The notes below the pieces were generated by a model. The model searched no databases, had not been told where the DNA came from, and saw only the letters and a list, made by a program, of their open reading frames with translations. Below are positions 29,521 to 43,200 of a stretch of DNA of 64,000 nucleotides, piece after piece (within the stretch, counting starts at the first letter, position 1; every line of letters begins with the position of its first letter). The DNA comes from Ostrea edulis (lineage: Eukaryota): NCBI RefSeq assembly GCF_947568905.1, contig NC_079172.1:43462001-43526000 (forward strand), given 5' to 3'. A program made the position numbers and the translations under genes.

Positions 29521-32500
29521 TCAATTATCAAATGGCGGCAGTCCGAACATCTCCGGCTTGAACTCCTCCAGAGAGTCGAGCACTAATGTGGCCATATGTT
29601 GGTGCGTCTGTTTGTTGATTTCTTTGAGGGGTATCCACACACACTGCATGCCTGCTGCATGGGCAGCCTCCACTCCATTTGGAGCATCCTCAAACACCAG
29701 CACCTGGTACAAAGATACCAAAGACAAACAGAGACTTATATATTTGTTTTACTTTATCTTTAATTTTCTGATTATGCTACATACAGCTCTAAAATATTCA
29801 AGGTTTGAAGAATCAAAATCTACTGTTAAATCAATTATCTTATATCACATGCTCTCATTCAATTTTAGACCACTCTTTTAATGACTTATTCTGACATCTT
29901 TCCATGAAGTGTGTTGGCTAAATGAATGAACAGATTCAAACCATTCCTAACCCTGGTTTTGTGCTTGCTGCAAGTGATGCAGGTAAAGAAATCACACATT
30001 TTAGTAAGTAAATCTGTTTCTATGGATTTCACATAAAGGGCTGAATTACTGATGTGAAATTACTACTTCCTCTAACCTTGCTGGGGTGGGGGTTGTCGGG
30101 GAACCTTTGAGCAGCCAGTAGGAAGCAGTCGGGAGCTGGTTTGCCATGTTTACATTCAGGATCATCTCCACTGAGAACACTGTGATGGAACAAGGAAAAC
30201 AAGTCCTTGTGGCTGGACGTCTTTAACTGGAAACTCTGTGTATGGGAGCCGGTGGCTGTGGCAATAGGGATACCATGGTTACGTAAATGTTTGACTAAAC
30301 GCTCTGCTCCTGTGCACAAATACAGAAGTTGTACATGTACATGTATGTATATTTGTGCTTTACTGAGCAGTTTAGAAGATGTTCTAAAAATGCCAAAACT
30401 TGAAAACTCTCAAGACAGATTCACACATTTCCCCCCAGTTATATCACTTCTACATGAATATATAAGGGAAGAAATTATCTACTGAAGATCATACATGTAA
30501 TATTCTAATCTATCCTTCCGACCCATTCACATTTTACATATACTACTCAAAATTTGATAAGGATCATAGATATTTTTCTGTTTAAAAAATTAATAACTGC
30601 ATAACTGGCAATATTGTGTCCAAGTGAAATAAAAAACATCTTCAACAAACTTGCACGTGCATTTCATGCCATGGGAAATGCGTTTCTCATCACAGTTTAT
30701 GGTTTTGCTACCATTGCACGATTTTCACTCAGGCATCGGTGTCTGATTCTTTCTAAAATTTCAAACTCACTTGAGTGTTTACACTACGTTTATCAACACA
30801 ATGCCCCCTCAACGTGTAAGGCGTCGCCTGACGACAGAACAACTGGGCAGATGTATTGGAATGCTTGACGCTGGCTATTCACAACGTGGCGTTGCAAATG
30901 CACTAAACGTCAGCCAGAGCGTTGCAAATGGCCTGGAACAGACAGCAAACTTTTAGTACAGCAGCACACCGACATGGGGGTGGTCGTCAAGGGTCGACAA
31001 CCCAACGCCAAGACCATTTTTTGGCTCTTCAGGCACGACGCCATCCCTTCTGGACAGCAACCAGCCTAGGTAACGACCTCCTGAACGCCTCGGGGGTGAA
31101 TGTGTCCACTCAGACGATACGGAATCGGCTGCACAATGCAGGTCTCAACTCCAGAAGGGCATGTGTTCGAGTCCCTCTGACTGTTCGACACCGGCGAGAG
31201 TGATTGGACTGGGCTGAAGATCATGTCACTTGGACACAGAACGATTGGGTTCAAGTTCTGTTCACCGATGAGTCCAGGTATTGTTTGGACTTTACAGACA
31301 GGAGGCATCGAGTGTGGCGACGACAACGTGAACGTTTCCATGATGCAAACATCAGTGAACATGACCGTTATGGTGGTGGTTCCATCATGGTCTGGGGTGG
31401 AATCAGCAGGGATGGAAGAACAGATCTTCATGTCCTGGAGAGAGGAACAATGATGGGGGTGTGGTACCGGGATGAGATCCTCGATGTTTACGTCAGACCC
31501 TACGCTGGTGCTGTTGGCCCCGAGTTCATCCTGATGGATGATAACGCCCGTCCTCATCGCGCCAGGGTGGTGGAGCAGTACCTTCAGCAGGAGACAATTG
31601 TCCGTATGGACTGGCCAGCGCGCTCGACGGACTTGAACCCGATTGAGCATGTATGGAACATGCTGCAGGTTGCCCTTTCACGCCATAGAGCACAACCCAC
31701 GACTTTGGCAGAGCTCGGAAACGCCCTCGTGGAAGAGTGGAACAACCTTCCCATTGGAAACATCCGGGTGCTTATTGACAGCATGGCTCGACGTTGTCAA
31801 GCCGTCATTGATGCAAGGGGAGGCCATACCCGGTATTGACACTTCATCGAATAAGTGTAATGATGGACTATCCCCCAAAACTGTGTAATTCTTTCTCTGG
31901 TTTGCTGTTAACTTTTTGTAATGAAATGCCTTTTGGTGTTGTTATCAGATTTCAAGCATTCCGTATTGATAAAAGTTCATGCCGTTCATGAATTTTCATT
32001 CATAACCTGAGTAAACACTTTTCTGAGTCAAATTTATGTCTTTTGTTATGTTAGTGGTAAATTACACACATATAACCTAGTGATCCTTATCAAATTTTGA
32101 GTAGTATATTTTGGACAGAGATTGACAAAGTGTCTAATCTGATAACAGATTGATAGTGGTGACAGTGAGTAGAGATTGAGTTGTTACAGACAGTGGAGAC
32201 AATGTGTAGAGATTGAGTTGTTACAGACTGACAGTGGTGACAGTGTGTAGAGATTGAGTTGTTACAGATTGGTAGTGGAGACAATGTGTAGAGATTGAGT
32301 TGTTACAGATTGACAGTGGAGACAATGTGTAGAGATTGAGTTGTTACAGATTGACAGTGGTGACAATGTGTAGAAATTGAGTTGTTACAGATTGACAGTG
32401 GTGATAATGTGTAGAGATTGAGTTGTTACAGATTGACAGTGGAGACAATGTGTAGAGATTGAGTTGTTACAGATTGACAGTGGTGACAGTGTGTAGAGAT

Positions 32501-34204
32501 TGAGTTGTTACAGATTGACAGTGGTGACAATGTGTAGAGATTGAGTTGTTACAGATTGACAGTGGTGACAATGTGTAGAGATTGAGTTGTTTTAGATTGA
32601 CAGTGGTGACAATGTGTAGAGATTGAGTTGTTACAGATTGACAGTGGAGACAATGTGTAGAGATTGAGTTGTTACAGACTGACAGTGGTGACAGTGTGTA
32701 GAGATTGAGTTGTTACAGATTGACAGTGGAGACAGTGTGTAGATATTGAGTTGTTACAGATTGACAGTGGTGATAATGTGTAGAGATTGAGTTGTTACAG
32801 ATTGACAGTGGAGACAATGTGTAGAGATTGAGTTGTTACAGATTGACAGTGGTGACAGTGTGTAGAGATTGAGTTGTTACAGATTGACAGTGGAGACAAT
32901 GTGTAGAGATTGAGTTGTTACAGATTGGTAGTGGAGACAATGTGTAGAGATTGAGTTGTTACAGATTGACAGTGGAGACAGTGTGTAGAGATTGAGTTGT
33001 TACAGATTGACAGTGGTGATAATGTGTAGAGATTGTGTTGTTACAGATTGACAGTGGAGATAATGTGTAGAGATTGAGTTGTTACAGACTGATAGTGGTG
33101 ACAATGTATAGAGATTGTGTTGTTACAGATTGACAGTGGAGACAATGTGTAGAGATTGTGTTGTTACAGATTGACAGTGGAGACAGTGTGTAGAGATTGA
33201 GTTGTTACAGATTGACAGTGGTGACAGTGTGTAGAGGTCGAGTTGTTACAGACTGACAGTGGAGACAATGTATAGAGGTTGAGTTGTTTCATTACCTGGC
33301 AATAAATTGACAGTGGGGAACAATTTCTCCTGTTGCTCATGAGCCATTTGTAGATACTGGTCAACAGTCAATGGTAAATCTAAGGTGTCTGTAATACAAA
33401 TTTTTTGCTAGTTAAAAGAATTATTTGTTTCTCTTTACAATGAATTCCTTGATTGAAACTAATATTTTCATGGTAAGTACTAAATTTAACATTTGTTACT
33501 AAATTTCATGGGGACTCAATATTCATGGACTTTGAGGGTATCCCAGGAATTTCAACAACAATAAAATACACTATTCATATACAGTATATAATGTTTCAAC
33601 AGACAGAATTAACCATGTCCACGAAATCCCAAAGGAACTGTAAAATCTGGAGAATCCATGAAAATTGGCCCCCATGAATTCTAATGAATTATCAGCACGA
33701 TCTTCTAGAAGTCTGGAAACTCGTCATTTTCTACTATCGGTAATTTTATCCTGTTAGTATACTGATAATCATTCAATAAAAAAAATAGATATAGACTCTC
33801 GGAATCAGCTTTAGTCACGCACCGATAACAATTTTTGCTGCTTCTGGTTCTTTCCTGCCCATCTGTTTGACTTTGATGTCCATTGTAAACGTCTTCCCAT
33901 ACTGCCCCACAATATTTTGTACAATGACGGTGTACATACGTTCTGTGTCTGTTAAAGAGAAACTCTCAAATAAAATGATCAGTCAGTTTGATAGAAACAA
34001 GATGTACTGTGAGCAATGCTCACTAAGAATACCCCCCGCTTACCCCAATCTCCCAAAGGGTGTTGTTAATAGGTATAAATTTTTTTTTTTTTTTTTTTTT
34101 GTTTTTTTATTTCACTCAATCGACATACATTTGCACAAAAGTAGATACAAAAGAATATGAATATATTTAAGCGTACATATATATATTATAATGTTCATTT
34201 TCTT

Positions 34205-34253
<49 letters not shown>

Positions 34254-37200
34254 GGAGTCAATTGACTAATGGAGACCATTTTTCCCAGTTATAACTATCC
34301 AGGTTGATTTGATACAATTGTTTCCAATCATTTATAAGGGCTTTAAGTGTTAGCTGATTTTTTTGACATCTATTCCTATATATATATTTTTTTATTATTA
34401 TAAGTAATGCATTGTATGACCTTAAATGTTTTTGTTTTGTATCACCAAATATAAAAGTTTTGACATCAAATTCTATTTTAATCTCCTTTGAATTGCAATA
34501 TCTGATAAATTCTGATAATAATTGTTGTACTTTTGGACAATCCCAAAGTAAATGGTAAATTGTTTCGTCTTCCCTATCACAAAAGGTACATAGTTTAGAA
34601 TCTACTCTACCTAATTTGTACATATAGCTATTAGTAGTTAAAATGTGGTGGTTAACTCTGTATTGAAACCATAATAATTTAGAATCCAATGTAGTCAAGA
34701 ATGGCAGGTAAAAGATTGCCTTCCATTGGTTATCAGAGGTAATGAAATATCTACTCCATTTCTTTTTTCCTGTGGGTATAGCATCTGATTTATTGAGAGT
34801 ATCATGCATAGGTTTCGACCCTTTCTTTGTTAAAACAAATAGTTTGATATTCAAGGGAATAAGGGGTTTTTGCACAGATGCTTTATTTGTAAAGTTATAC
34901 TTTTTCATATCTGTGGCTACTACTTGTGTTATACCCATATATGTTAAAAAATTCATTTGTAAGTTAAATCTGTCTTTAAATATTTTAAAATTTATAATTT
35001 CTCCTTTTTCGTCAAGTAGATCATGTACATTTTTTATTCCTTTATCATACCATGTTTTATAGAAGATGGACTGACTTTCTATCTTGAACTTATGATTATT
35101 CCATAAAGGTTGGCTCATATAGTCCTCCCAAGATTTAATGACAACTTTTTCTTGAATTTCCTTAAAAGCCACCATGACATCTTTCCAAAAGTCATTTTTT
35201 ACATTTTCAACTATCTGTAAGATATAGTCTGAACCTGTATTTATTAATTTGTCCAAGTTTACATTATTTCTAAGGAGACTTTTCCATTTTGAGTTGTCCT
35301 CCATAACCAATCTCCTTATCCAAGTCGACTTTAGTCCTTTGATATAACAATCTAGATCAACCATTTTTAGTCCCCCATATGCATACTTTTGTGTGGCAAC
35401 TTTTCTTTTAATTTTATCAGATTTTGAATTCCAGACAAATTCAAATAAAATAGTATTAAGTTCTTTTATGAAAGCATTCTTTGGGTTTGGTAAGGCAATA
35501 AATAAATGATTTAGTTGTGAAATTAGGAGTGATTTCACTAGAGTTATTTTCCCAATTGGAGTCAACTTTCGTTTACTCCACTGGTCAATAATTGACTTAA
35601 TCTTCACAAGTTTTTTGTCATAGTTCAATTTCAAAATTTTATTTAAATCCACATCATAATGGATTCCTAGTAGTTTAAATCGAGTTGTCCATTTGAAATT
35701 CATATCAGAACATAATCTTTCATCTGAATATTTTTTACTTCCTATCCAAACAATCTGAGTTTTATCTCGGTTTATTTTGAGACCAGATAATTTATAAAAT
35801 TCATCAAGTTCTTTCAAGGTTTCTCTCAATGAAACCTCCGATCCGTCAAGGAAAATGGATGTATCATCTGCGTACTGTGACATTAGATATTCTGTGTTAT
35901 TGATTAGAATTCCCTTTATACTTCTGTTATTTTTAATTTTTATAGCCAAAATTTCAGCGCATAATAAGAATATGTAAGGTGATAGTGGGTCCCCTTGCCT
36001 ACAACCACGTCCTAGTTTAAAGAAATTAGATAAAAAGCCTGCTTGTGTCACACATGAAACCGCATTATAGTGAAATGTTGTAATCCAACTACAGAAATAA
36101 GGTCCAAAATTAAAGTATTGCAAAGTATCATTTATAAATTTCCAAGAAACAGAATCAAAGGCTTTTTCAAAATCTATCATAACTAACACTCCAGGAATAT
36201 GATTTGTTTCTGTATGATTCATTAGATCATATATTAATCTACTGTTTTCTCCTATGTACCTTCCAGGTATGAAACCTGTTTGATCATTACTAATAATTTT
36301 ACTAAGCACAGTTTTTATTCTTCTTGCTATACAGCCTGACCCAATTTTATATGTAACATTGAGAAGAGAAATTGGTCTCCAGTTGTTTAGAGAGAATTTT
36401 GATTTTCCCTCTTTGGGTATGCAAGTTATAATTCCTTGTTTTTGTGTTGATGATAATTCTCCTTGGTCAAATCCATAATTTAATGATCGCACGACAAAAA
36501 ATCCAATTTTTTTCCAGAAAATTTTAAAGAATTCAGCTGTGAAGCCATCACTACCAGGGCTTTTGTTATTTGACATATCCTTTAAGATTATAGATGCTTC
36601 TTTGTGAGTAATATATCCTTCTATTGATTTTTTCTCTCCATCAGATAGCTTAGGAACACTAAAATCCTTTAATATTTCAGATATTTTACCATCTGCTTTT
36701 TCATTTATATTTCTATTACTCGAATATAAGTTTCTATAAAAATTTTCCACCTCCATCAAAATGTCTTCTTGTTTGATTATTTCTCTTTGTACATCATTTT
36801 CTACAATTATTACTTTTGGAATGATTTTATTTGTAAAATGGCGATTCTCTAGGTTGAGAAAATAATTAGATGGCTTTTCTCCTTCATTTATCCACTTAGC
36901 CCGGGAACGTACCATACAACCATTGACCTTATGATTTCGTATATTTTCAAGATCTTTTTTCTTTTCATTTATAGTTTCAATATTTCATTCAAAATCCCTT
37001 TCCAATTCTTCTAGTTGATCTTGTAAATCCTTTTCTTTTTTTGATCTTTGCTTTTTGATGTGACTTGCATATGAAATTGTTTTTGATCTGATTTCCATCA
37101 ATAGGGTCTCTAAAAATAGTTGTTCATTAATTATAAACTGTATGTCTGCTGCAGGAATGTCTAAAACTGACTCTCTTTCATATACGGGAACTGCGTATTG

Positions 37201-40200
37201 TTGTTTTATTTGATCAATATGATTATTAATACATTTAATATACTCAATGTCTTTTAAAAGTGAGTTATTAAACTTCCATAGTCCCTTCCCATGTTTGAAA
37301 TTATTTAATTTAAGTGATACATACACTGGAGAATGATCTGATCTATAGCTTGTCATAATGTCACTGCTTTTAACTTCCTTTAGGAGGGAAGCAGATATAA
37401 GAAAGAAATCTAGGCGAGCTTGTTTCATAGGATTAGGTTTTCTCCAAGTGAACCTATTTACATTTGGATGGAATTCTCTATATATATCAACTAAATTTAA
37501 AGATAGCATTTGTTCTAGAACAGCTTCCCTTGCCTTGGGGTTATTAACATGTAAATAATTGAAATAATCTTTGGTAGTATCTAGTACCAGATTAAAATCC
37601 CCAACAATAATAATTTCCTCGTTGTTTAATTTTGTAATAGTATCTCCTAATTTCTGATAGAAGTCAGGAGAGTCATCATTTGGTCCATATATACATATCA
37701 AACTTATTTTCTTATTTTCTAATGAAATGCTAAGTGCAAGTAAATTACCAGTATTATCTGAAATAGGCTGTTCATGAATTTGGTACTCAAAATTATTATT
37801 AAATAGAATGGCAACCCCTCTTGAGTTTGAAGTAAAAGAATTGAATCGAGCTTCATAGCCCCACTCATTTCTTATTTCTTGTTCCATTTCAATTGTAAAA
37901 TGTGTGTCTATTAAACATAAAATGCTGCAATGCTGTTGGCGATAGTATTGGAAAATGTCTTTCCGTTTCTTATGGTCATTTAATCCTTGACAGTTCACAG
38001 AGATAATTTTAATTTCAGCCATGTATCTGTTTGTTTGTTATATAGATTTCAGCAAAACACGGACTGACAAAATACTGGCCCCCATTGAAAAGTTTGAAAC
38101 GTAAAGGAAAGGAGAAAGAGAGAGAGAGAGAAATGAGAAGAAAATAATAATCATGTATGAAAAGAGTTGAAGATGTTGATTCATTATATTATAACCGAGT
38201 AATTTAGTCGGAAAGAGTGCTATTGTCCAAACCTAGTACATATAATATATATACATTTGTCGTCGTCGTCTTGTATACCGGAAGTTGTAATATTGAAGGA
38301 AATTATCAAAACCAAAATTGACACAATTACAAATTCCGGAAAACAATATTAGAATAGGATGATCGCGATACAAAGCTATATAGACCCATCATATGCAGAT
38401 TAATATAGACATACTATAGCATAACTATACACACCACTTGCAAATAGTACCTTGATAATAGTAATTAGTAATATTGAGTTTTTATAATTCACATTTCTAA
38501 ATATAACTTGCAAGTAATGTACACTGATATAATACAATATATATACATATATAACCCGCAGTAGCCACTCCTAGAGTACAGTGTTGGCCACTTCACACAC
38601 ATGGTCCTCCATGATTCGGAAGCGGTCCGGACCAATATGATTTGGGCCACACCAGCGCGTTATAACTACACCCAGATTTTCAATTTTGTTTGTTTTCATA
38701 TATGTCATAAGGCGCCTCCCTGCTCCATGCTCGCCATCATCCCAGTAACTTTCGTGAATTTTCCCTGAAGAATCTACAAACCTGTAGATTAGGATTCGAT
38801 GATCGGCTGCGGCTGAGTAGGGGTCTACACAAACTTTTTTGTATAAGTTTTGAACTTCTATTATTGAAGCAACCTTCGCTCCGGTGGCGAATATTTCAGA
38901 ACCCTTAAGTTTGGTTGGTTCAGTTGTAGTGTCTGAGATATCCAGGTTTTCTATTTCATCGGGTGTAATTTGTAGAGTATCCGATGTTTCTATCTTTTGT
39001 ACTGGATCAATATATGCGTCTCCGTTTGGCAAAGTTACTCGCCCCCGTTCCACTCTCGCCTTGATTTTATTTTCGCGCAGAGAGTCAGAAATATCATACA
39101 GTCTTTTACGTTCTTCCCGAATTGCAGGGGGGTCTTGCGATGTTATATAGAAAGGAAGCCTGATTTTTTCTAGCTTTTTCGCTTTTTGCGCTTTCAGTAT
39201 TTCATCTTTTTTGCTTCGATCCACCAATTTTGCTGTTATTGTGACGGGTCTAGAATTGTAAGTACCCTTGGCGCTATTTCTGTGAATGCGAACAAAGGAA
39301 ACTTGTACCCCTAAAGATTCCTTTATCAGTTTGGGAATAGCATCTGATAGGAGTTCACCAGGTGTATATTCAAAGTTGTGGATCAGAATATTATCTCGCA
39401 TTGAACGGGAACGTAATTCATTAAGTTCCTTGTCTTGGTGTGCAATTTTTCTATCCAGTTTAATCACTGAGGCCCTTAATAAATCGACTTCGCTTCGAAG
39501 TTGGGCATTCTCCTGACGTATAAAATATATATCGTCGTAATTGCTCTCCGATTGTTCTGCCACGTATTTGAGTGATTTCACAAATCCCGATTCCTCATCA
39601 TGGATTAAAGATTTCATTTGGGCAATGTCATTTGATAACGAATCGTAGTTGGATAGTTTGTTCCTTAAACTATCAATGGTGTTTTGTAATTCTTGAATTC
39701 TACAGTTCATATCTTTGTTAACACTAACCTGATTTGCGGAACACTGCTCAGTCTTTCTAAAACTTGTCTGACCACTCTTTTGTTGTTGATTCAACGGCAT
39801 TTTTACTGCATCAAACACATTCAAAAATCTTCAAAAAAACACTATCCAAGTTCGTGAATTATATGGGTTGCAGAGAAGCAGCAATCACCTATTAAAAAGC
39901 TTCAAAAATAGCTCTTTCCGACCAAATTTTCGGGAGTCGAGTTTTACGTGGTCATTCCTCAGGTAGGTCACGCGATTTATAATAGGTATAAATTACCTCT
40001 TTCCGGAGTGTAAAAATATGGTATGCATTTGTAGAAGAAAATGGAAGATATAGTCCGAACACAAATCCATGGCATAAACCTATAATTTTGACCTTGAGAT
40101 CAAAGGTCAAGGTCATAAAGAGGTCATGAATGTACATGACACATAGTCTCATGGTGACACACCCATGTCTTATGGTATGACTATGTCAAAACCCTATAAT

Positions 40201-43200
40201 CAATTTTGACCTTGAGGTCAAAGTTCAAGGTCATATACAGGCCATGAAGGTACTCGACACATCGTCTCATGGTGATACACTCATGTGTCAAATATGATAT
40301 GCCTATGTCAAAGAACAAAGAAGTCATGGCCCGGACATGAATCCATTGTAAAAACCTTTAATTTTGACCTTGAGGTCAAGGTCATATGGGGGTCATGAAG
40401 GTACATGACACATCGTCTCCTGGTGATACACTCATGTGTCAATTATGTTATGCCTATGTCAAAGAACAAAGAAGTTATGACCCAGACACGAATCCTATGT
40501 AAAAAACCTTTAATTTTGACCTTGAGGTCAAGGGTCAAGGTCATATGGAGGTCATGAAGGTACATGACACATCGTCTCATGGTGATACACTCATGTGTCA
40601 AATATGGTATGCCTATGTCAAAGAACAAAGAAGTTATGGCCCGGACACGAATCCATTGTAAAAAACCTTTAATTTTGACCTTGAGGTCAAGGTCATATAG
40701 AGGTCATGAAGGTACTTGTCACATCGTCTCATGGTGATCTACCTGTGTGCCAAATATGGTATGCCTAAGTCAAAGAACAAAGAAGTTATGGCCCGGACAT
40801 GAATCTGCACGGACAGACAGAGTGATTCCTATATACCCCCCAGAACTTCGTTCGGGGGGTATAATAATTTACCAGACAGAAGTTTTCTACCTTTGAGTGT
40901 TTTACTTTGTAGTATGCTGTAATGTTTCAAATATTAATGATAATACCCAGTTCCATAAATCACTTCACCAAGGATAGGCCCACAAGTCTCATCCGTCACC
41001 CAAGTATTAGTTAATAGTATCACTAGCCTGCAAGTCAAACTCGTCACCTCAGTATTAGTTAAAAGTATTACTAGCCCCAACATGCCCAAGAGCTACAACA
41101 TATTAATAACATTCCTATTTTGCATATCTGAACGGAATTCTAATATTCAGCAGCAGTATAAATCAAGATGTGTTCTTAAAATACAAATGCCCCTGAAAGT
41201 GCCCATACCGTCTGGTAAAATATTTTTCATAATATCAAAATCAACTAGTAAGTCTTTCAAATGATAAAGACAATAATCACTATAAGTTTATTCCAACCTG
41301 GAATCAAACCCCTACCCCTGGGATCATGAACATTAACATTTTTTGTAAAAGGCTACTTGCTCCTTCTAAAAATCCATAATTTCAATTAATAGGGCTGAAA
41401 TGATACGCCCCCTTCGCGATAAGATACGTATTGCAATACTTATGCATGTAACGATTTAATATTTTTGATAGGATACATTCTTAATTAGAAGAAATCAATA
41501 AATCAATAATTCTCAACAATTTTTTTTTTTTTACCAAGATTCACATTCACAATTTTAAAAGTAAAATACTTCCAACAGCCGAATGGTATAAAGGTGTCTG
41601 TTGGCATGGTAGTTTAAACTGATTAAGATTGTACAAACTCGAGGCTAACGTTATCGAATGCCATTGTCCCTTGTGCAATTGTATTCAACCGAAGATCGAG
41701 GCAGTGAATTGAACTTTGAAATGAGCTTTTATATCAAACAGTATCTATATTTTGATGAATTGTGAAGCATGTAAATCTTATTTCCTTAATCAAACATGTA
41801 ATCACTCCTCGATTAACGAGATTGTACCCAATCGTAACTACTCGGCTATTTCCGTAACTGCAAATGAACCTTGTATGTGGATCGACGCCATCAGAGGATA
41901 TTGCCATGTGTACACAAATGTAACTATGACGTCACAGTCGTACGTTACAATATGAAACATAAGCTTTCAAATGCATATCATATATATCTAAGGTATTCTA
42001 CCACTTTCAATTTCCACTGATAGCGAGCGAAGCTCACATCGCGACAACCTCGCTCCAATGATTACACATATGAATCACATGATTTGCTCTTCATCACCTG
42101 AAAAAAGATCTCGAGTATTACCCATAATGCTTCTGGAAAAATGTCGCCGTCACTGCAGTATACTTCATTGACAAGTCCGTAATTAAAATAATTAGATTGT
42201 TTAGATAGTACTATAAACGTTTTTGAATTCCAGACAAGGTTTCTCATAGCTTCAAACGTTTTGTTTTTGCTTGATTCGAGAGAAGAAGAAAAACATTGCA
42301 GCTAATATGACGTCACAATGTAACTGTTTACATCCACCGCATTATATTCCCCGCGTTAAATGAAGAGACGGATAAAATGCCTGTAAGTCGTGTGGTAAGA
42401 TGTTAATGGGCTTCGTTCGTCTCAACGGTCACACCGTACAAAATATTATGTTTATGTATTAGCCTGAATAAGACGTTAATGATACCGAAACTGAATCTGT
42501 GGTGAAAATCTAAACACTACATTACACAAGGATTCAGTTCTGGCCTTCTAACCTCATCCACAGGCGTGCTTCCAGCGAAGAAATGCATCGATTTGATGCA
42601 ATTCTTGCGCCGATCCACATCCGAGTCTCCTTACCAGTTACGGAAAAGGACGACCAGTCGACGTGATTCGATTGGATTGTACCATGTGTCCCATGTTTGT
42701 AAATTTGCTCAACATTGACATTGAATATAACATCACAATTTACTGTTTGTATCAATTGCATCATATTTCCTGCATTCAACAAATAGGCGGCCGGATCAAC
42801 TTCAGGATATTTTTGTCTTGTTATGGACACAGGCACCTGTGATCGGTGGGGAAATAATATATTTTGGATAAATTATTGGTTCTCTGTATAAAAATAATTT
42901 CTTTCTAGAAGGGGTAATGGTATGTACATAAGATTATTGAAGCTATCCACACTTCAGGTGCCTATGGTTGTGGATATAGATAGTATTAATGTCAATACTC
43001 TTGCTTCGCCCTCAATCACGGTCACTCCGTAAGACATATCATAGAGGGCGAAGGACTGTGAGCTCCCTCCCTATAGGTAACACGTATATACATGTTTAAA
43101 AGGAAAATATAGAAAACTAGTGAAAAATTAAACCATACTTATGGAACTTGAAAATTTTGGTCCCAAATGGCGTCGATTCGAATATTAGCACGTGGACATG

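What the first reader, a model, noticed from the sequence alone, without database searches (positions are those of the whole stretch)
38571..38925. L1/Tx1 retrotransposon ORF1p fused to an IMPACT/YigZ (UPF0029) domain
Seen: after a normal L1-type coiled coil-RRM-CTD, ORF1 continues in frame for ~115 aa: GSEIFATGAKV...AAADHRILIYRF...WDDGEHGAGRRLMTYM...NLGVVITRWCGPNHIGPDRFRIM. Established: these match the signature motifs of the IMPACT 'ancient domain' and bacterial YigZ (human IMPACT from memory: ASATHNIYAYRI, DDGETAAGGRLL, NVMVVVSRWYGGILLGPDRF). IMPACT/Yih1 inhibits GCN2 through its RWD domain binding GCN1, and the ancient domain is implicated in ribosome or nucleic-acid binding. The RWD domain is absent here. 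Inference: this LINE lineage captured a translation-control module and would display it on the multimeric ORF1p RNP. It could recruit or hold ribosomes, dampen the integrated stress response, or add a nucleic-acid chaperone activity. I do not recall this architecture among described ORF1 types (RRM, CCHC, PHD, esterase), but novelty is unverified. It might also explain bivalve gene models annotated as IMPACT homologues.
Basis: partly seen in the sequence, partly recalled or inferred. Interest (0 to 1): 0.88.

Follow-up and report, generated by a model that had tools for sequence, protein, structure and literature searches.

The report
Oyster LINE ORF1 carrying IMPACT domain
A young jumping gene (an L1/Tx1-type LINE) in the flat oyster genome makes an RNA-binding ORF1 protein that ends in a domain taken from the cellular translation regulator IMPACT. 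This fusion is a conserved, selected feature of a large family of such elements in oysters, pearl oysters, ark clams and mussels, and I found no description of it in the literature.

Summary
The stretch 38574-38915 (minus strand) encodes a genuine UPF0029/IMPACT domain: Pfam 54 bits against a cut-off of 27, and fold Z 15-16 to YigZ/TT1547. It forms the in-frame C-terminus of a 409-aa L1-type ORF1p (coiled coil, RRM, CTD; fold Z 10-11 to human L1 ORF1p).

The ORF belongs to a full-length 5.9-kb LINE (34081-39979) with a 14-bp target-site duplication, a poly(A) tail and an EN-RT ORF2. ORF2 is broken here by one in-frame stop.

It is not a chance chimera:
- Ostrea edulis holds at least 78 domain copies in at least 7 divergent families, each followed by an ORF2.
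- The same architecture occurs in Crassostrea, Magallana, Saccostrea, Pinctada, Tegillarca and Mytilus.
- A profile search found 607 clusters at 50% identity with E<=1e-30.
- The domain is the best-conserved part of ORF1 and is under purifying selection (omega about 0.08).
- It is much closer to eukaryotic IMPACT/Yih1 (101 bits) than to bacterial YigZ (36-38 bits), and it has no RWD domain.

Many copies are annotated as "protein IMPACT homolog". I found no published description. The function is inferred, not shown. The scan noted the same architecture elsewhere in this genome (s1-311840).

The parts
39980..39993 (-). Target-site duplication, 5' copy (ATTTATACCTATTA read on the minus strand)
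   Evidence: Identical 14-mer at both ends of the element
34081..39979 (-). Full-length L1/Tx1-type LINE insertion, 5,899 bp
   Evidence: Ends defined by the TSD and by blastn to other genomic copies at 98.3-99.3% identity, which stop at 39972-39975 and 34080
39801..39979 (-). 5' UTR
   Evidence: Lies between the TSD and the ORF1 ATG. The RefSeq model P0001 starts at the same Met
38571..39800 (-). ORF1, 409 aa plus stop codon
   Evidence: Open frame. Intact in at least 6 near-identical copies
39402..39725 (-). ORF1p coiled coil (aa 26-133)
   Evidence: Two long helices in the AF2 model. Heptad-spaced trimer interface at residues 87-133 in the 3-copy model. The C-terminal part from about aa 89 aligns to the L1 ORF1p trimer
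39135..39401 (-). ORF1p RRM (aa 134-222)
   Evidence: VIA-align Z 10.6, rmsd 2.7 A to the human L1 ORF1p central domain 2w7a
38991..39134 (-). ORF1p CTD (aa 223-270)
   Evidence: Model residues up to 268 align to L1 ORF1p residues up to 302-306 in 2ykp, 2yko and 2ldy
38916..38990 (-). Linker between the CTD and the IMPACT domain (aa 271-295)
   Evidence: Variable in sequence but at the same position in all families
38574..38915 (-). IMPACT/UPF0029 domain (aa 296-409), the finding itself
   Evidence: Pfam PF01205 at 54.3 bits. Z 15.8 and 15.3 to TT1547 and YigZ, 11.2 to Yih1. The TE-domain profile scores Yih1 at 100.9 bits
38023..38570 (-). Spacer between ORF1 and ORF2 (548 nt)
   Evidence: ORF coordinates
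36988..38022 (-). ORF2, apurinic-type endonuclease part (345 aa)
   Evidence: Pfam Exo_endo_phos at 4e-10 and Exo_endo_phos_2 at 4e-7
36985..36987 (-). Single in-frame stop codon that interrupts ORF2 in this copy
   Evidence: Translation across the junction shows one stop in the same frame
34258..36984 (-). ORF2, reverse transcriptase and C-terminal zinc-knuckle part, with stop codon
   Evidence: Pfam RVT_1 at 7e-35; zf-RVT at 25.7 bits, just under its cut-off of 27.5
34109..34257 (-). 3' UTR, including a (CT)n microsatellite at 34210-34250
34081..34108 (-). Poly(A) tail
34067..34080 (-). Target-site duplication, 3' copy

Best explanation
The stretch encodes the C-terminal domain of ORF1p of a recently inserted, full-length L1-superfamily (L1/Tx1-type) LINE in Ostrea edulis. 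ORF1p is a standard type-II L1 ORF1 protein: a trimer-forming coiled coil, an RRM and a CTD. The 'ancient' UPF0029 domain of a eukaryotic IMPACT gene, without its RWD domain, was fused in frame to its C-terminus. The junction lies at the same position in all families and the whole ORF1 is homologous, so the capture most probably happened once, in an ancestor of a large LINE clade. That clade has since diversified in pteriomorph bivalves. Purifying selection as strong as on the RRM shows that the domain is needed for the element's propagation.

Inferred mechanism, not shown: each ORF1p trimer displays three IMPACT domains on the LINE ribonucleoprotein. There they add a contact to RNA, the ribosome or another conserved ligand that helps assembly of the RNP on its own mRNA or translation of ORF2. 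It cannot act as IMPACT does on GCN1/GCN2, because the RWD domain is absent.
For: Domain identity:
- Pfam PF01205 at 54.3 bits, cut-off 27.
- PDB sequence match to Yih1 at E=1e-9.
- AF2 model with pLDDT 84. Foldseek finds Yih1, L1 ORF1p, TT1547 and YigZ at probability 1.0. VIA-align gives Z 15.8, 15.3 and 11.2 for the domain and Z 10.4-11.4 for L1 ORF1p.

Element:
- 14-bp TSD and poly(A) tail.
- Other genomic copies are 98.3-99.3% identical.
- ORF2 has EN, RT and zf-RVT. An intact ORF2 from a related family matches human L1 ORF2p at E=5e-92 over residues 18-1185, against 1e-18 for R2.

Lineage feature:
- At least 78 domain matches in the genome, about 18 of them in open frames of 330-435 aa.
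- Seven families share 27-37% ORF1 identity and the same architecture.
- Where ORF2-like sequence was detected downstream (every family fetched except family C), it lies on the same strand. The same holds in Crassostrea virginica and Saccostrea cucullata.
- Three very divergent representatives sit upstream of open ORF2s: 1245 aa, 1268 aa, and 951 aa running to the contig end.
- The profile search found 607 clusters at E<=1e-30. Of 158 proteins examined, 142 carry both the ORF1 core and the IMPACT domain.
- 103 of 110 representatives hit PF01205 and none hits RWD.
- Named hosts are Ostrea, Saccostrea, Crassostrea, Magallana, Pinctada, Tegillarca and Mytilus.

Selection:
- dN/dS is 0.08 in the IMPACT domain, against 0.09 in RRM+CTD and 0.09 in the coiled coil.
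- Mean pairwise identity among 117 full-length representatives is 32.8% for IMPACT, 29.4% for RRM, 29.9% for CTD and 25.6% for the coiled coil.
- The family's signature residues (H, DDGE, G, G, R, G, R) are at least 90% conserved.

Origin:
- The TE-domain profile scores Yih1 at 100.9 bits, against 38.5 for TTHA1053 and 35.9 for YigZ. The TE domain shares the eukaryotic spacing of the DDGE-AG motif.

Trimer:
- The 3-copy model scores 0.78 against a best control of 0.00. Runs agree in at least 90% of contacts and partner pLDDT is at least 84. The mark was reached by 21 of 30 proteins solved as pairs of one chain and 0 of 23 solved as single chains. The tool warns that a pass may come from memory of L1 ORF1p and that its calibration used two copies.
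Against: - No experiment or RNA data here show expression or activity. Only one 245-nt RNA-Seq contig matched, inside ORF2.
- This copy's ORF2 carries a stop codon.
- The N-terminal part has no sequence-level match to Pfam Transposase_22 or to L1 ORF1p. Its L1 ORF1 identity rests on the predicted fold and on context.
- The biochemical function of the UPF0029 domain is unknown in any organism (PMC4503747). The proposed mechanism is therefore inference.
- The domain tree cannot test one capture against several, because only a fungal IMPACT and one unplaced tandem protein were available as host-type sequences.
- dS is close to saturation (1.39), so omega is approximate.
- The organisms behind most divergent representatives are unknown.
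Confidence: 0.85

Rival explanations
1. A chance chimera or assembly or annotation artefact present only in this copy, for example an L1 inserted into or beside an IMPACT exon and read through.
For: None found.
Against: Near-identical copies with the same open ORF1 lie on at least 6 chromosomes. Divergent families in this genome and in six other bivalve genera have the same junction. This copy has its own TSD around the whole element.
Confidence: 0.01
2. These are host genes, as RefSeq annotates them ('protein IMPACT homolog'): a domesticated ORF1-IMPACT fusion serving the oyster rather than a transposon protein.
For: RefSeq and UniProt name many of them IMPACT homolog or IMPACT-like. Purifying selection would also fit a host gene. 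A single domesticated copy among the many cannot be excluded.
Against: The family is multicopy and dispersed, with copies 98-99% identical. ORF1 sits upstream of an EN-RT ORF2 on the same strand in all but one of the families fetched. There is a TSD and a poly(A) tail. Hundreds of 50%-identity clusters exist. A separate intron-containing candidate for the true host IMPACT lies at C1:36.95 Mb.
Confidence: 0.04
3. The domain came from a bacterial YigZ gene by horizontal transfer, not from a eukaryotic IMPACT gene.
For: On fold, the Z-scores are highest for the bacterial structures (15.8 and 15.3, against 11.2 for the NMR model of Yih1). In the domain tree YigZ attaches inside the TE set, but on a branch of length 3.6 with weak support of 85/24.
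Against: The TE-domain profile scores Yih1 at 100.9 bits (E=4e-28), aligned to the end of the domain. The bacterial proteins score 36-38 bits. They also have a 2-residue insertion in the DDGE-AG motif that TE domains and Yih1 lack. The second YigZ domain is absent, since the ORF ends a few residues after the UPF0029 match.
Confidence: 0.05
4. The domain works as IMPACT does: it suppresses GCN2 and the integrated stress response so that LINE translation continues under stress.
For: The domain derives from IMPACT. LINE expression is known to meet stress responses.
Against: IMPACT/Yih1 inhibits GCN2 by competing for GCN1 through its N-terminal RWD domain (PMC4503747). No RWD is present in any of the 110 representatives scanned.
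Confidence: 0.1
5. The domain is a neutral passenger that hitch-hikes on ORF1 without contributing to retrotransposition.
For: No functional data exist. A young pair of copies (families E and G) shows omega 0.63 in the domain, as expected for decay after insertion.
Against: Between lineages omega is about 0.08, with synonymous sites near or at saturation. The domain is the most conserved ORF1 segment across 117 representatives. The signature residues are retained. The domain is kept in more than 100 divergent clusters.
Confidence: 0.03

Closest known systems
Mammalian LINE-1 ORF1p (type II ORF1: coiled coil, RRM, CTD; PDB 2ykp, 2yko, 2w7a)
   Same: Same order of coiled coil, RRM and CTD. Fold match Z 10.4-11.4 over 159-171 residues. 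A predicted parallel trimer through the coiled coil. Encoded upstream of an APE-RT ORF2 that matches human ORF2p at E=5e-92. The element has a TSD and a poly(A) tail.
   Different: It carries an extra 114-aa IMPACT/UPF0029 domain after the CTD. It has no sequence-level match to Pfam Transposase_22. The host is a bivalve. The literature places bivalve L1-like LINEs in the Tx1 clade (PMC10294476).
IMPACT / Yih1 (RWD plus 'ancient' UPF0029 domain; GCN1-binding inhibitor of GCN2; PDB 6bqi)
   Same: The C-terminal domain is homologous (100.9 bits with the TE-domain profile). It keeps the signature H, DDGE-AG and R..GG..LG..RF motifs and the eukaryotic motif spacing.
   Different: It has no RWD domain and no acidic linker. 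The domain is attached to a transposon RNA-binding protein, is multicopy and is mobile. The known GCN1-competition mechanism cannot apply.
Bacterial YigZ / TTHA1053 (UPF0029 plus a C-terminal domain; PDB 1vi7, 2cve)
   Same: Same fold for the N-domain (Z 15.3-15.8, rmsd 2.2-2.4 A).
   Different: Weak sequence relation (36-38 bits). A 2-residue insertion in the DDGE motif. The second YigZ domain is absent from the LINE protein.
LINE ORF1 proteins with accessory domains (esterase or PHD in CR1/L2-type ORF1, CCHC knuckles in Jockey/I-type ORF1).
   Same: They give precedent that ORF1 is modular and can acquire host-derived domains that are then kept by selection.
   Different: None of the described modules is UPF0029/IMPACT. 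Here the addition sits on an L1-type (type II) ORF1.

Membership tests
Pfam PF01205 UPF0029 / Impact_N domain | Score above the curated gathering threshold over the full profile | tested here: met
   54.3 bits against 27, profile positions 1-103 of 107. 103 of 110 related ORF1s also pass
Pfam PF01205 UPF0029 / Impact_N domain | YigZ N-domain fold | tested here: met
   Z 15.8 (2cve) and 15.3 (1vi7), rmsd 2.2-2.4 A over 112-117 residues
Pfam PF01205 UPF0029 / Impact_N domain | Signature residues (A.H, DDGE.GAG, R..GG..LG..RF) | tested here: met
   A41, H43, D63, D64, E66, G68, G70, R91, G99 and R102 are at least 90% conserved in 31 divergent TE domains and align to the same residues of Yih1
IMPACT/Yih1 protein family (GCN2 regulator) | N-terminal RWD domain that binds GCN1 | tested here: not met
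   No PF05773 hit in this ORF1 or in 110 relatives. RWD hits in the genome lie elsewhere
IMPACT/Yih1 protein family (GCN2 regulator) | C-terminal ancient domain of the eukaryotic type | tested here: met
   Yih1 scores 100.9 bits against 36-38 for the bacterial proteins
IMPACT/Yih1 protein family (GCN2 regulator) | Binding of GCN1, ribosome or actin, and inhibition of GCN2 | not testable with these tools
   Needs biochemistry
L1-superfamily LINE (L1/Tx1) | ORF2 with an N-terminal APE-type endonuclease, an RT and a C-terminal Cys-rich motif | tested here: met
   Exo_endo_phos, RVT_1 and zf-RVT at 25.7 bits, just under its cut-off. An intact ORF2 of a related family matches human L1 ORF2p at E=5e-92 over nearly its full length
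L1-superfamily LINE (L1/Tx1) | Type II ORF1 (coiled coil, RRM, CTD) | tested here: met
   Met at fold level. Not met at sequence level: no Transposase_22 hit and no PDB sequence hit. UniRef names one cluster member 'L1 transposable element RRM domain-containing protein'
L1-superfamily LINE (L1/Tx1) | Insertion by target-primed reverse transcription: TSD and 3' poly(A) | tested here: met
   14-bp TSD and a 28-nt A tail
L1-superfamily LINE (L1/Tx1) | Placement in the Tx1 or the L1 clade by RT phylogeny | not tested
   No reference RT set was available. PMC10294476 reports Tx1 as the L1-like clade of bivalves
Bacterial YigZ family | Second, C-terminal domain after UPF0029 | tested here: not met
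   The ORF ends 8 residues after the Pfam match. Where tails exist in relatives, they are acidic and disordered and have no Pfam hit

The most novel reading that the evidence does not exclude
The IMPACT 'ancient' domain has an autonomous activity linked to the ribosome or to RNA. A whole LINE clade uses this activity, without the RWD domain, to couple ORF1p trimers to their own translating mRNA, which would serve cis-preference or ORF2 translation. If so, these elements would be a natural separation-of-function experiment. They would reveal the core function of a universally conserved domain that is still uncharacterised.
Probability: 0.3. Interest if true: 0.85.

Novelty: new variant of a known kind. 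Interest (0 to 1): 0.64.

Why it matters
First, it adds a new module to the known repertoire of LINE ORF1 architectures. The module is kept by selection in hundreds of lineages, so it must matter for retrotransposition.

Second, the UPF0029/IMPACT domain is conserved from bacteria to humans, yet its molecular function is still called elusive (PMC4503747). Finding it detached from RWD and attached to an RNA-packaging trimer gives a strong context clue and a tractable assay system.

Third, it has a practical side. Many bivalve gene models named 'protein IMPACT homolog' or 'IMPACT-like' are LINE ORF1s. This can mislead gene-family counts, expression studies and scans for selected genes. For example, an 'IMPACT homolog' is listed as a salinity candidate in Crassostrea gigas (PMC5989259). 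I could not tell whether that model is a LINE ORF1.

Tried and rejected
- Sequence-level identification of the ORF1 N-terminal part failed. There was no Pfam Transposase_22 hit and no PDB hit below E=0.3. Only the predicted fold identified it.
- I could not fetch the true host IMPACT gene. Candidate exons lie at G000:C1:36952979-36953146 and 36956157-36956267, with 46-54% identity to a fungal IMPACT. A tree of host against TE domains with oyster IMPACT was therefore not possible.
- The domain tree used one fungal IMPACT, a tandem-IMPACT protein of unknown source and E. coli YigZ. It cannot settle the number of captures. YigZ sits on a very long branch.
- RNA evidence: only a 245-nt contig from one small RNA-Seq run matched, inside ORF2, and the other runs are of unrecorded type. 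Transcription is not shown.
- Naming the organisms behind the most divergent representatives failed. Cluster look-ups, a second profile search and a literature search for the accession numbers gave no names.
- Literature searches for UPF0029, PF01205, YigZ or Impact_N together with retrotransposon or ORF1 found nothing relevant. Repbase and Dfam could not be consulted.
- Rejected readings: chance chimera, neutral passenger, bacterial origin and host gene. See the rival explanations.
- A search with the RRM-CTD part found some open frames of 300-500 aa at about 30% identity with no IMPACT match nearby, for example C9:12606874 and C2:57508229. These may be sister lineages without IMPACT, but I could not read them.
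Full report
**What is in the window.**
On the minus strand, the ORF listing shows three ORFs in a row. The first is 39824/39800..38571. The second is 38022..36985 (345 aa). The third is 36915..34258 (885 aa).

- Pfam assigns the first a UPF0029 (PF01205) domain at E=1.6e-14 and 54.3 bits (cut-off 27), covering profile positions 1-103 of 107.
- Pfam assigns the second Exo_endo_phos.
- Pfam assigns the third RVT_1 plus a near-threshold zf-RVT.
- The second and third ORFs are one ORF2 of about 1,253 codons, interrupted by a single in-frame stop at 36985-36987.

**Element boundaries.**
Blastn against other genomic copies shows 98.3-99.3% identity from 39972-39975 down to 34080. The sequence at both ends shows a 14-bp direct repeat, ATTTATACCTATTA, at 39993-39980 and 34080-34067. 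It flanks an element that ends in a 28-nt poly(A) tail.

This is therefore a complete 5,899-bp LINE insertion made by target-primed reverse transcription. It is young, judging by how similar the copies are.

**What kind of LINE.**
An intact 1,186-aa ORF2 from a related family in the same genome (L032) matches human L1 ORF2p structures at E=5e-92, with coverage of residues 18-1185. R2 proteins reach only 1e-18.

The ORF1 N-terminal part has no sequence-level match to Pfam Transposase_22 or to the PDB. I therefore predicted the structure from a 14-sequence alignment, which gave mean pLDDT 84.

- Foldseek returns, at probability 1.0, Yih1 (6bqi), the human L1 ORF1p trimer (2yko, 2ykp, 2ykq; about 200 columns), TT1547 (2cve) and YigZ (1vi7).
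- VIA-align gives the ranges:
  - Residues 89-268 align to L1 ORF1p 110-304 (Z 10.4-11.4).
  - Residues 133-222 align to the L1 ORF1p RRM (Z 10.6, rmsd 2.7 A).
  - Residues 288-409 align to TT1547 (Z 15.8, rmsd 2.2 A), YigZ (Z 15.3) and Yih1 (Z 11.2).

So ORF1p is a coiled coil (aa 26-133), an RRM (134-222), a CTD (223-270), a linker, and an IMPACT domain (296-409).

A three-copy model of residues 80-409 scored 0.78 against a best control of 0.00. The runs agree in at least 90% of contacts, and partner pLDDT is at least 84. The mark was reached by 21 of 30 proteins solved as pairs of one chain and by 0 of 23 solved as single chains. The interface runs along residues 87-133 in heptad spacing. 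The tool warns that such a pass may reflect memory of the solved L1 ORF1p trimer and that its calibration used two copies. I take it only as consistent with an L1-like trimer that presents three IMPACT domains.

The Tx1 subclade was not tested here. A survey of bivalve LINEs reports Tx1 as their L1-like clade and did not analyse ORF1 domains (PMC10294476).

**Not a one-off.**
The genome is Ostrea edulis. A 99%-identical RefSeq protein sits on a contig whose length equals that of G000:C6.

- A six-frame search with the 118-aa domain gives at least 78 matches. Nine are 97-100% identical, most of them in open frames of 369-425 aa. A few are 80-84% identical. Many are 35-56% identical, several in open frames of 330-435 aa. 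Pfam-based scanning gives 68 matches.
- I fetched 9-kb loci for seven divergent families (A-G). All encode the same ORF1 architecture, with the junction at the same alignment position.
- In all but family C, EN-RT sequence was detected downstream on the same strand. Family B has a copy with both ORFs open (ORF1 435 aa, ORF2 1,217 aa).
- The same arrangement is seen in Crassostrea virginica (L051) and Saccostrea cucullata (L054).

**Breadth.**
- A full-length profile searched against 1.84 billion representatives found 13,554 proteins at E<=1e-3, 4,731 at E<=1e-10 and 607 at E<=1e-30. The top 150 all have E<1e-46 and mostly align end to end.
- Local HMMs for the two halves show that 142 of 158 proteins carry both the ORF1 core and the IMPACT domain.
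- Pfam finds PF01205 in 103 of 110 representatives and RWD in none.
- Named sources are Ostrea edulis, Saccostrea echinata and S. cucullata, Crassostrea virginica, Magallana gigas, Pinctada imbricata, Tegillarca granosa and Mytilus species. All are pteriomorph bivalves.
- The ESM Atlas clusters (242 and 57 members) are labelled as mostly Mollusca.
- Three very divergent representatives of unknown organism also sit directly upstream of open ORF2s. Two (1,245 and 1,268 aa) carry Pfam EN, RT and zf-RVT. The third (951 aa) runs to the contig end and has no Pfam record.
- One subgroup has an extra acidic, disordered tail of 90-158 aa after the domain.

**Selection.**
Nei-Gojobori estimates compared the window ORF1 with an 80%-identical relative (L052). 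They give dN/dS of 0.080 for the IMPACT domain, 0.091 for RRM+CTD and 0.091 for the coiled coil, at dS 1.4-1.8. In more distant pairs synonymous sites are saturated, while pN in the domain is 0.10-0.35, close to pN in RRM+CTD and below that of the coiled coil in all but two pairs.

Among 117 full-length representatives, mean pairwise identity is highest in the IMPACT domain: 32.8%, against 29.4% for RRM, 29.9% for CTD and 25.6% for the coiled coil. The signature residues of the family (A41, H43, D63, D64, E66, G68, G70, R91, G99, R102 in domain numbering) are at least 90% conserved across 31 divergent TE domains. The domain is therefore under constraint at least as strong as the RNA-binding core.

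**Origin.**
A profile of the TE domains scores yeast Yih1 at 100.9 bits (E=4e-28), aligned through the terminal GP.RF..I helix. It scores Thermus TTHA1053 at 38.5 bits and E. coli YigZ at 35.9 bits. The bacterial proteins carry a two-residue insertion in the DDGE-AG motif that both Yih1 and the TE domains lack. This points to capture from a eukaryotic IMPACT gene.

A candidate for the real host gene, with two exon-like hits 3 kb apart, lies at C1:36.95 Mb. The maximum-likelihood tree of 123 domains has too few host-type sequences to test one capture against several. The conserved junction and the homology of the whole ORF1 make a single capture the parsimonious reading.

**Mechanism.**
Shown:
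- the domain's identity;
- its position at the C-terminus of an L1-type ORF1p;
- the absence of RWD;
- constraint on the domain;
- its spread across a large LINE clade.

Inferred:
- ORF1p trimerises as L1 ORF1p does and coats the LINE RNA, so the IMPACT domains are displayed in threes on the RNP.
- IMPACT/Yih1 acts on GCN2 through RWD-GCN1 competition, and the ancient domain's own function and partners 'remain elusive' (PMC4503747). The classic IMPACT mechanism is therefore unlikely here.
- My preferred reading, at about 30%, is an added contact to RNA, the ribosome or another conserved ligand that aids co-translational RNP assembly or ORF2 translation.
- Other possibilities are a chaperone-like or a still unknown enzymatic role.

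**Novelty.**
Full-text searches of about 8.4 million papers and preprints combined UPF0029, PF01205, YigZ or Impact_N with retrotransposon or ORF1. They found no description of this architecture. Repbase and Dfam could not be checked. Automatic databases already tag the proteins as 'Impact N-terminal domain-containing'.

I class it as a new variant of a known kind: an L1/Tx1 LINE with a previously undescribed ORF1 accessory domain. The scan's first stage noted the same architecture on another piece of this genome (s1-311840).

Noticed in passing
window 32145-33288: A 41-bp minisatellite with 28 copies and 92% matches. It explains the strong GC skew of 0.585 in that kilobase.
   Followed up: partly
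window 40225-40805: A 159-bp tandem repeat with 3.8 copies and 88% matches, lying just beyond the 5' TSD of the LINE.
   Followed up: no
G000:C1:36952979-36953146 and 36956157-36956267: Two exon-like UPF0029 matches 3 kb apart, 46-54% identical to a fungal IMPACT. This is the likely true host IMPACT gene. No RWD match was reported next to it, and the DNA could not be fetched.
   Followed up: partly
L031 compared with L032 (family B copies): The spacer between ORF1 and ORF2 is about 2.3 kb in L031 and about 1.4 kb in L032. The EN start is displaced in L031, so one copy probably carries a secondary insertion.
   Followed up: no
P0128 (ENA contig of 16.7 kb, organism unknown): A 569-aa predicted protein with three tandem eukaryote-type IMPACT domains and no ORF1 core. 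It groups with a fungal IMPACT in the domain tree. It may be a host IMPACT gene model with duplicated exons.
   Followed up: partly
P0095, P0096, P0147, P0115, P0107 and others (L064 for P0095): A subgroup of ORF1-IMPACT proteins has an extra 90-158-aa acidic, Ser/Thr/Gln-rich tail after the domain, with no Pfam hit. Others (P0130, P0146, P0157) have N-terminal extensions of 200-300 aa.
   Followed up: partly
G000:C9:12606874, C2:57508229, C4:47453918, C3:86524129 and others: Open frames of 300-500 aa that match the RRM-CTD part at 30-41% identity with no IMPACT match nearby. They may be sister ORF1 lineages without IMPACT.
   Followed up: no
PMC5989259 (Crassostrea gigas salinity resequencing study): A 'protein IMPACT homolog' on scaffold1377 is listed among highly differentiated candidate genes. 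Many oyster models with that name are LINE ORF1s, so it deserves a check. I could not tell which kind it is.
   Followed up: no
window 34210-34250: A perfect (CT)20 microsatellite (read on the minus strand) lies in the LINE 3' UTR, a few bases after the ORF2 stop codon.
   Followed up: no
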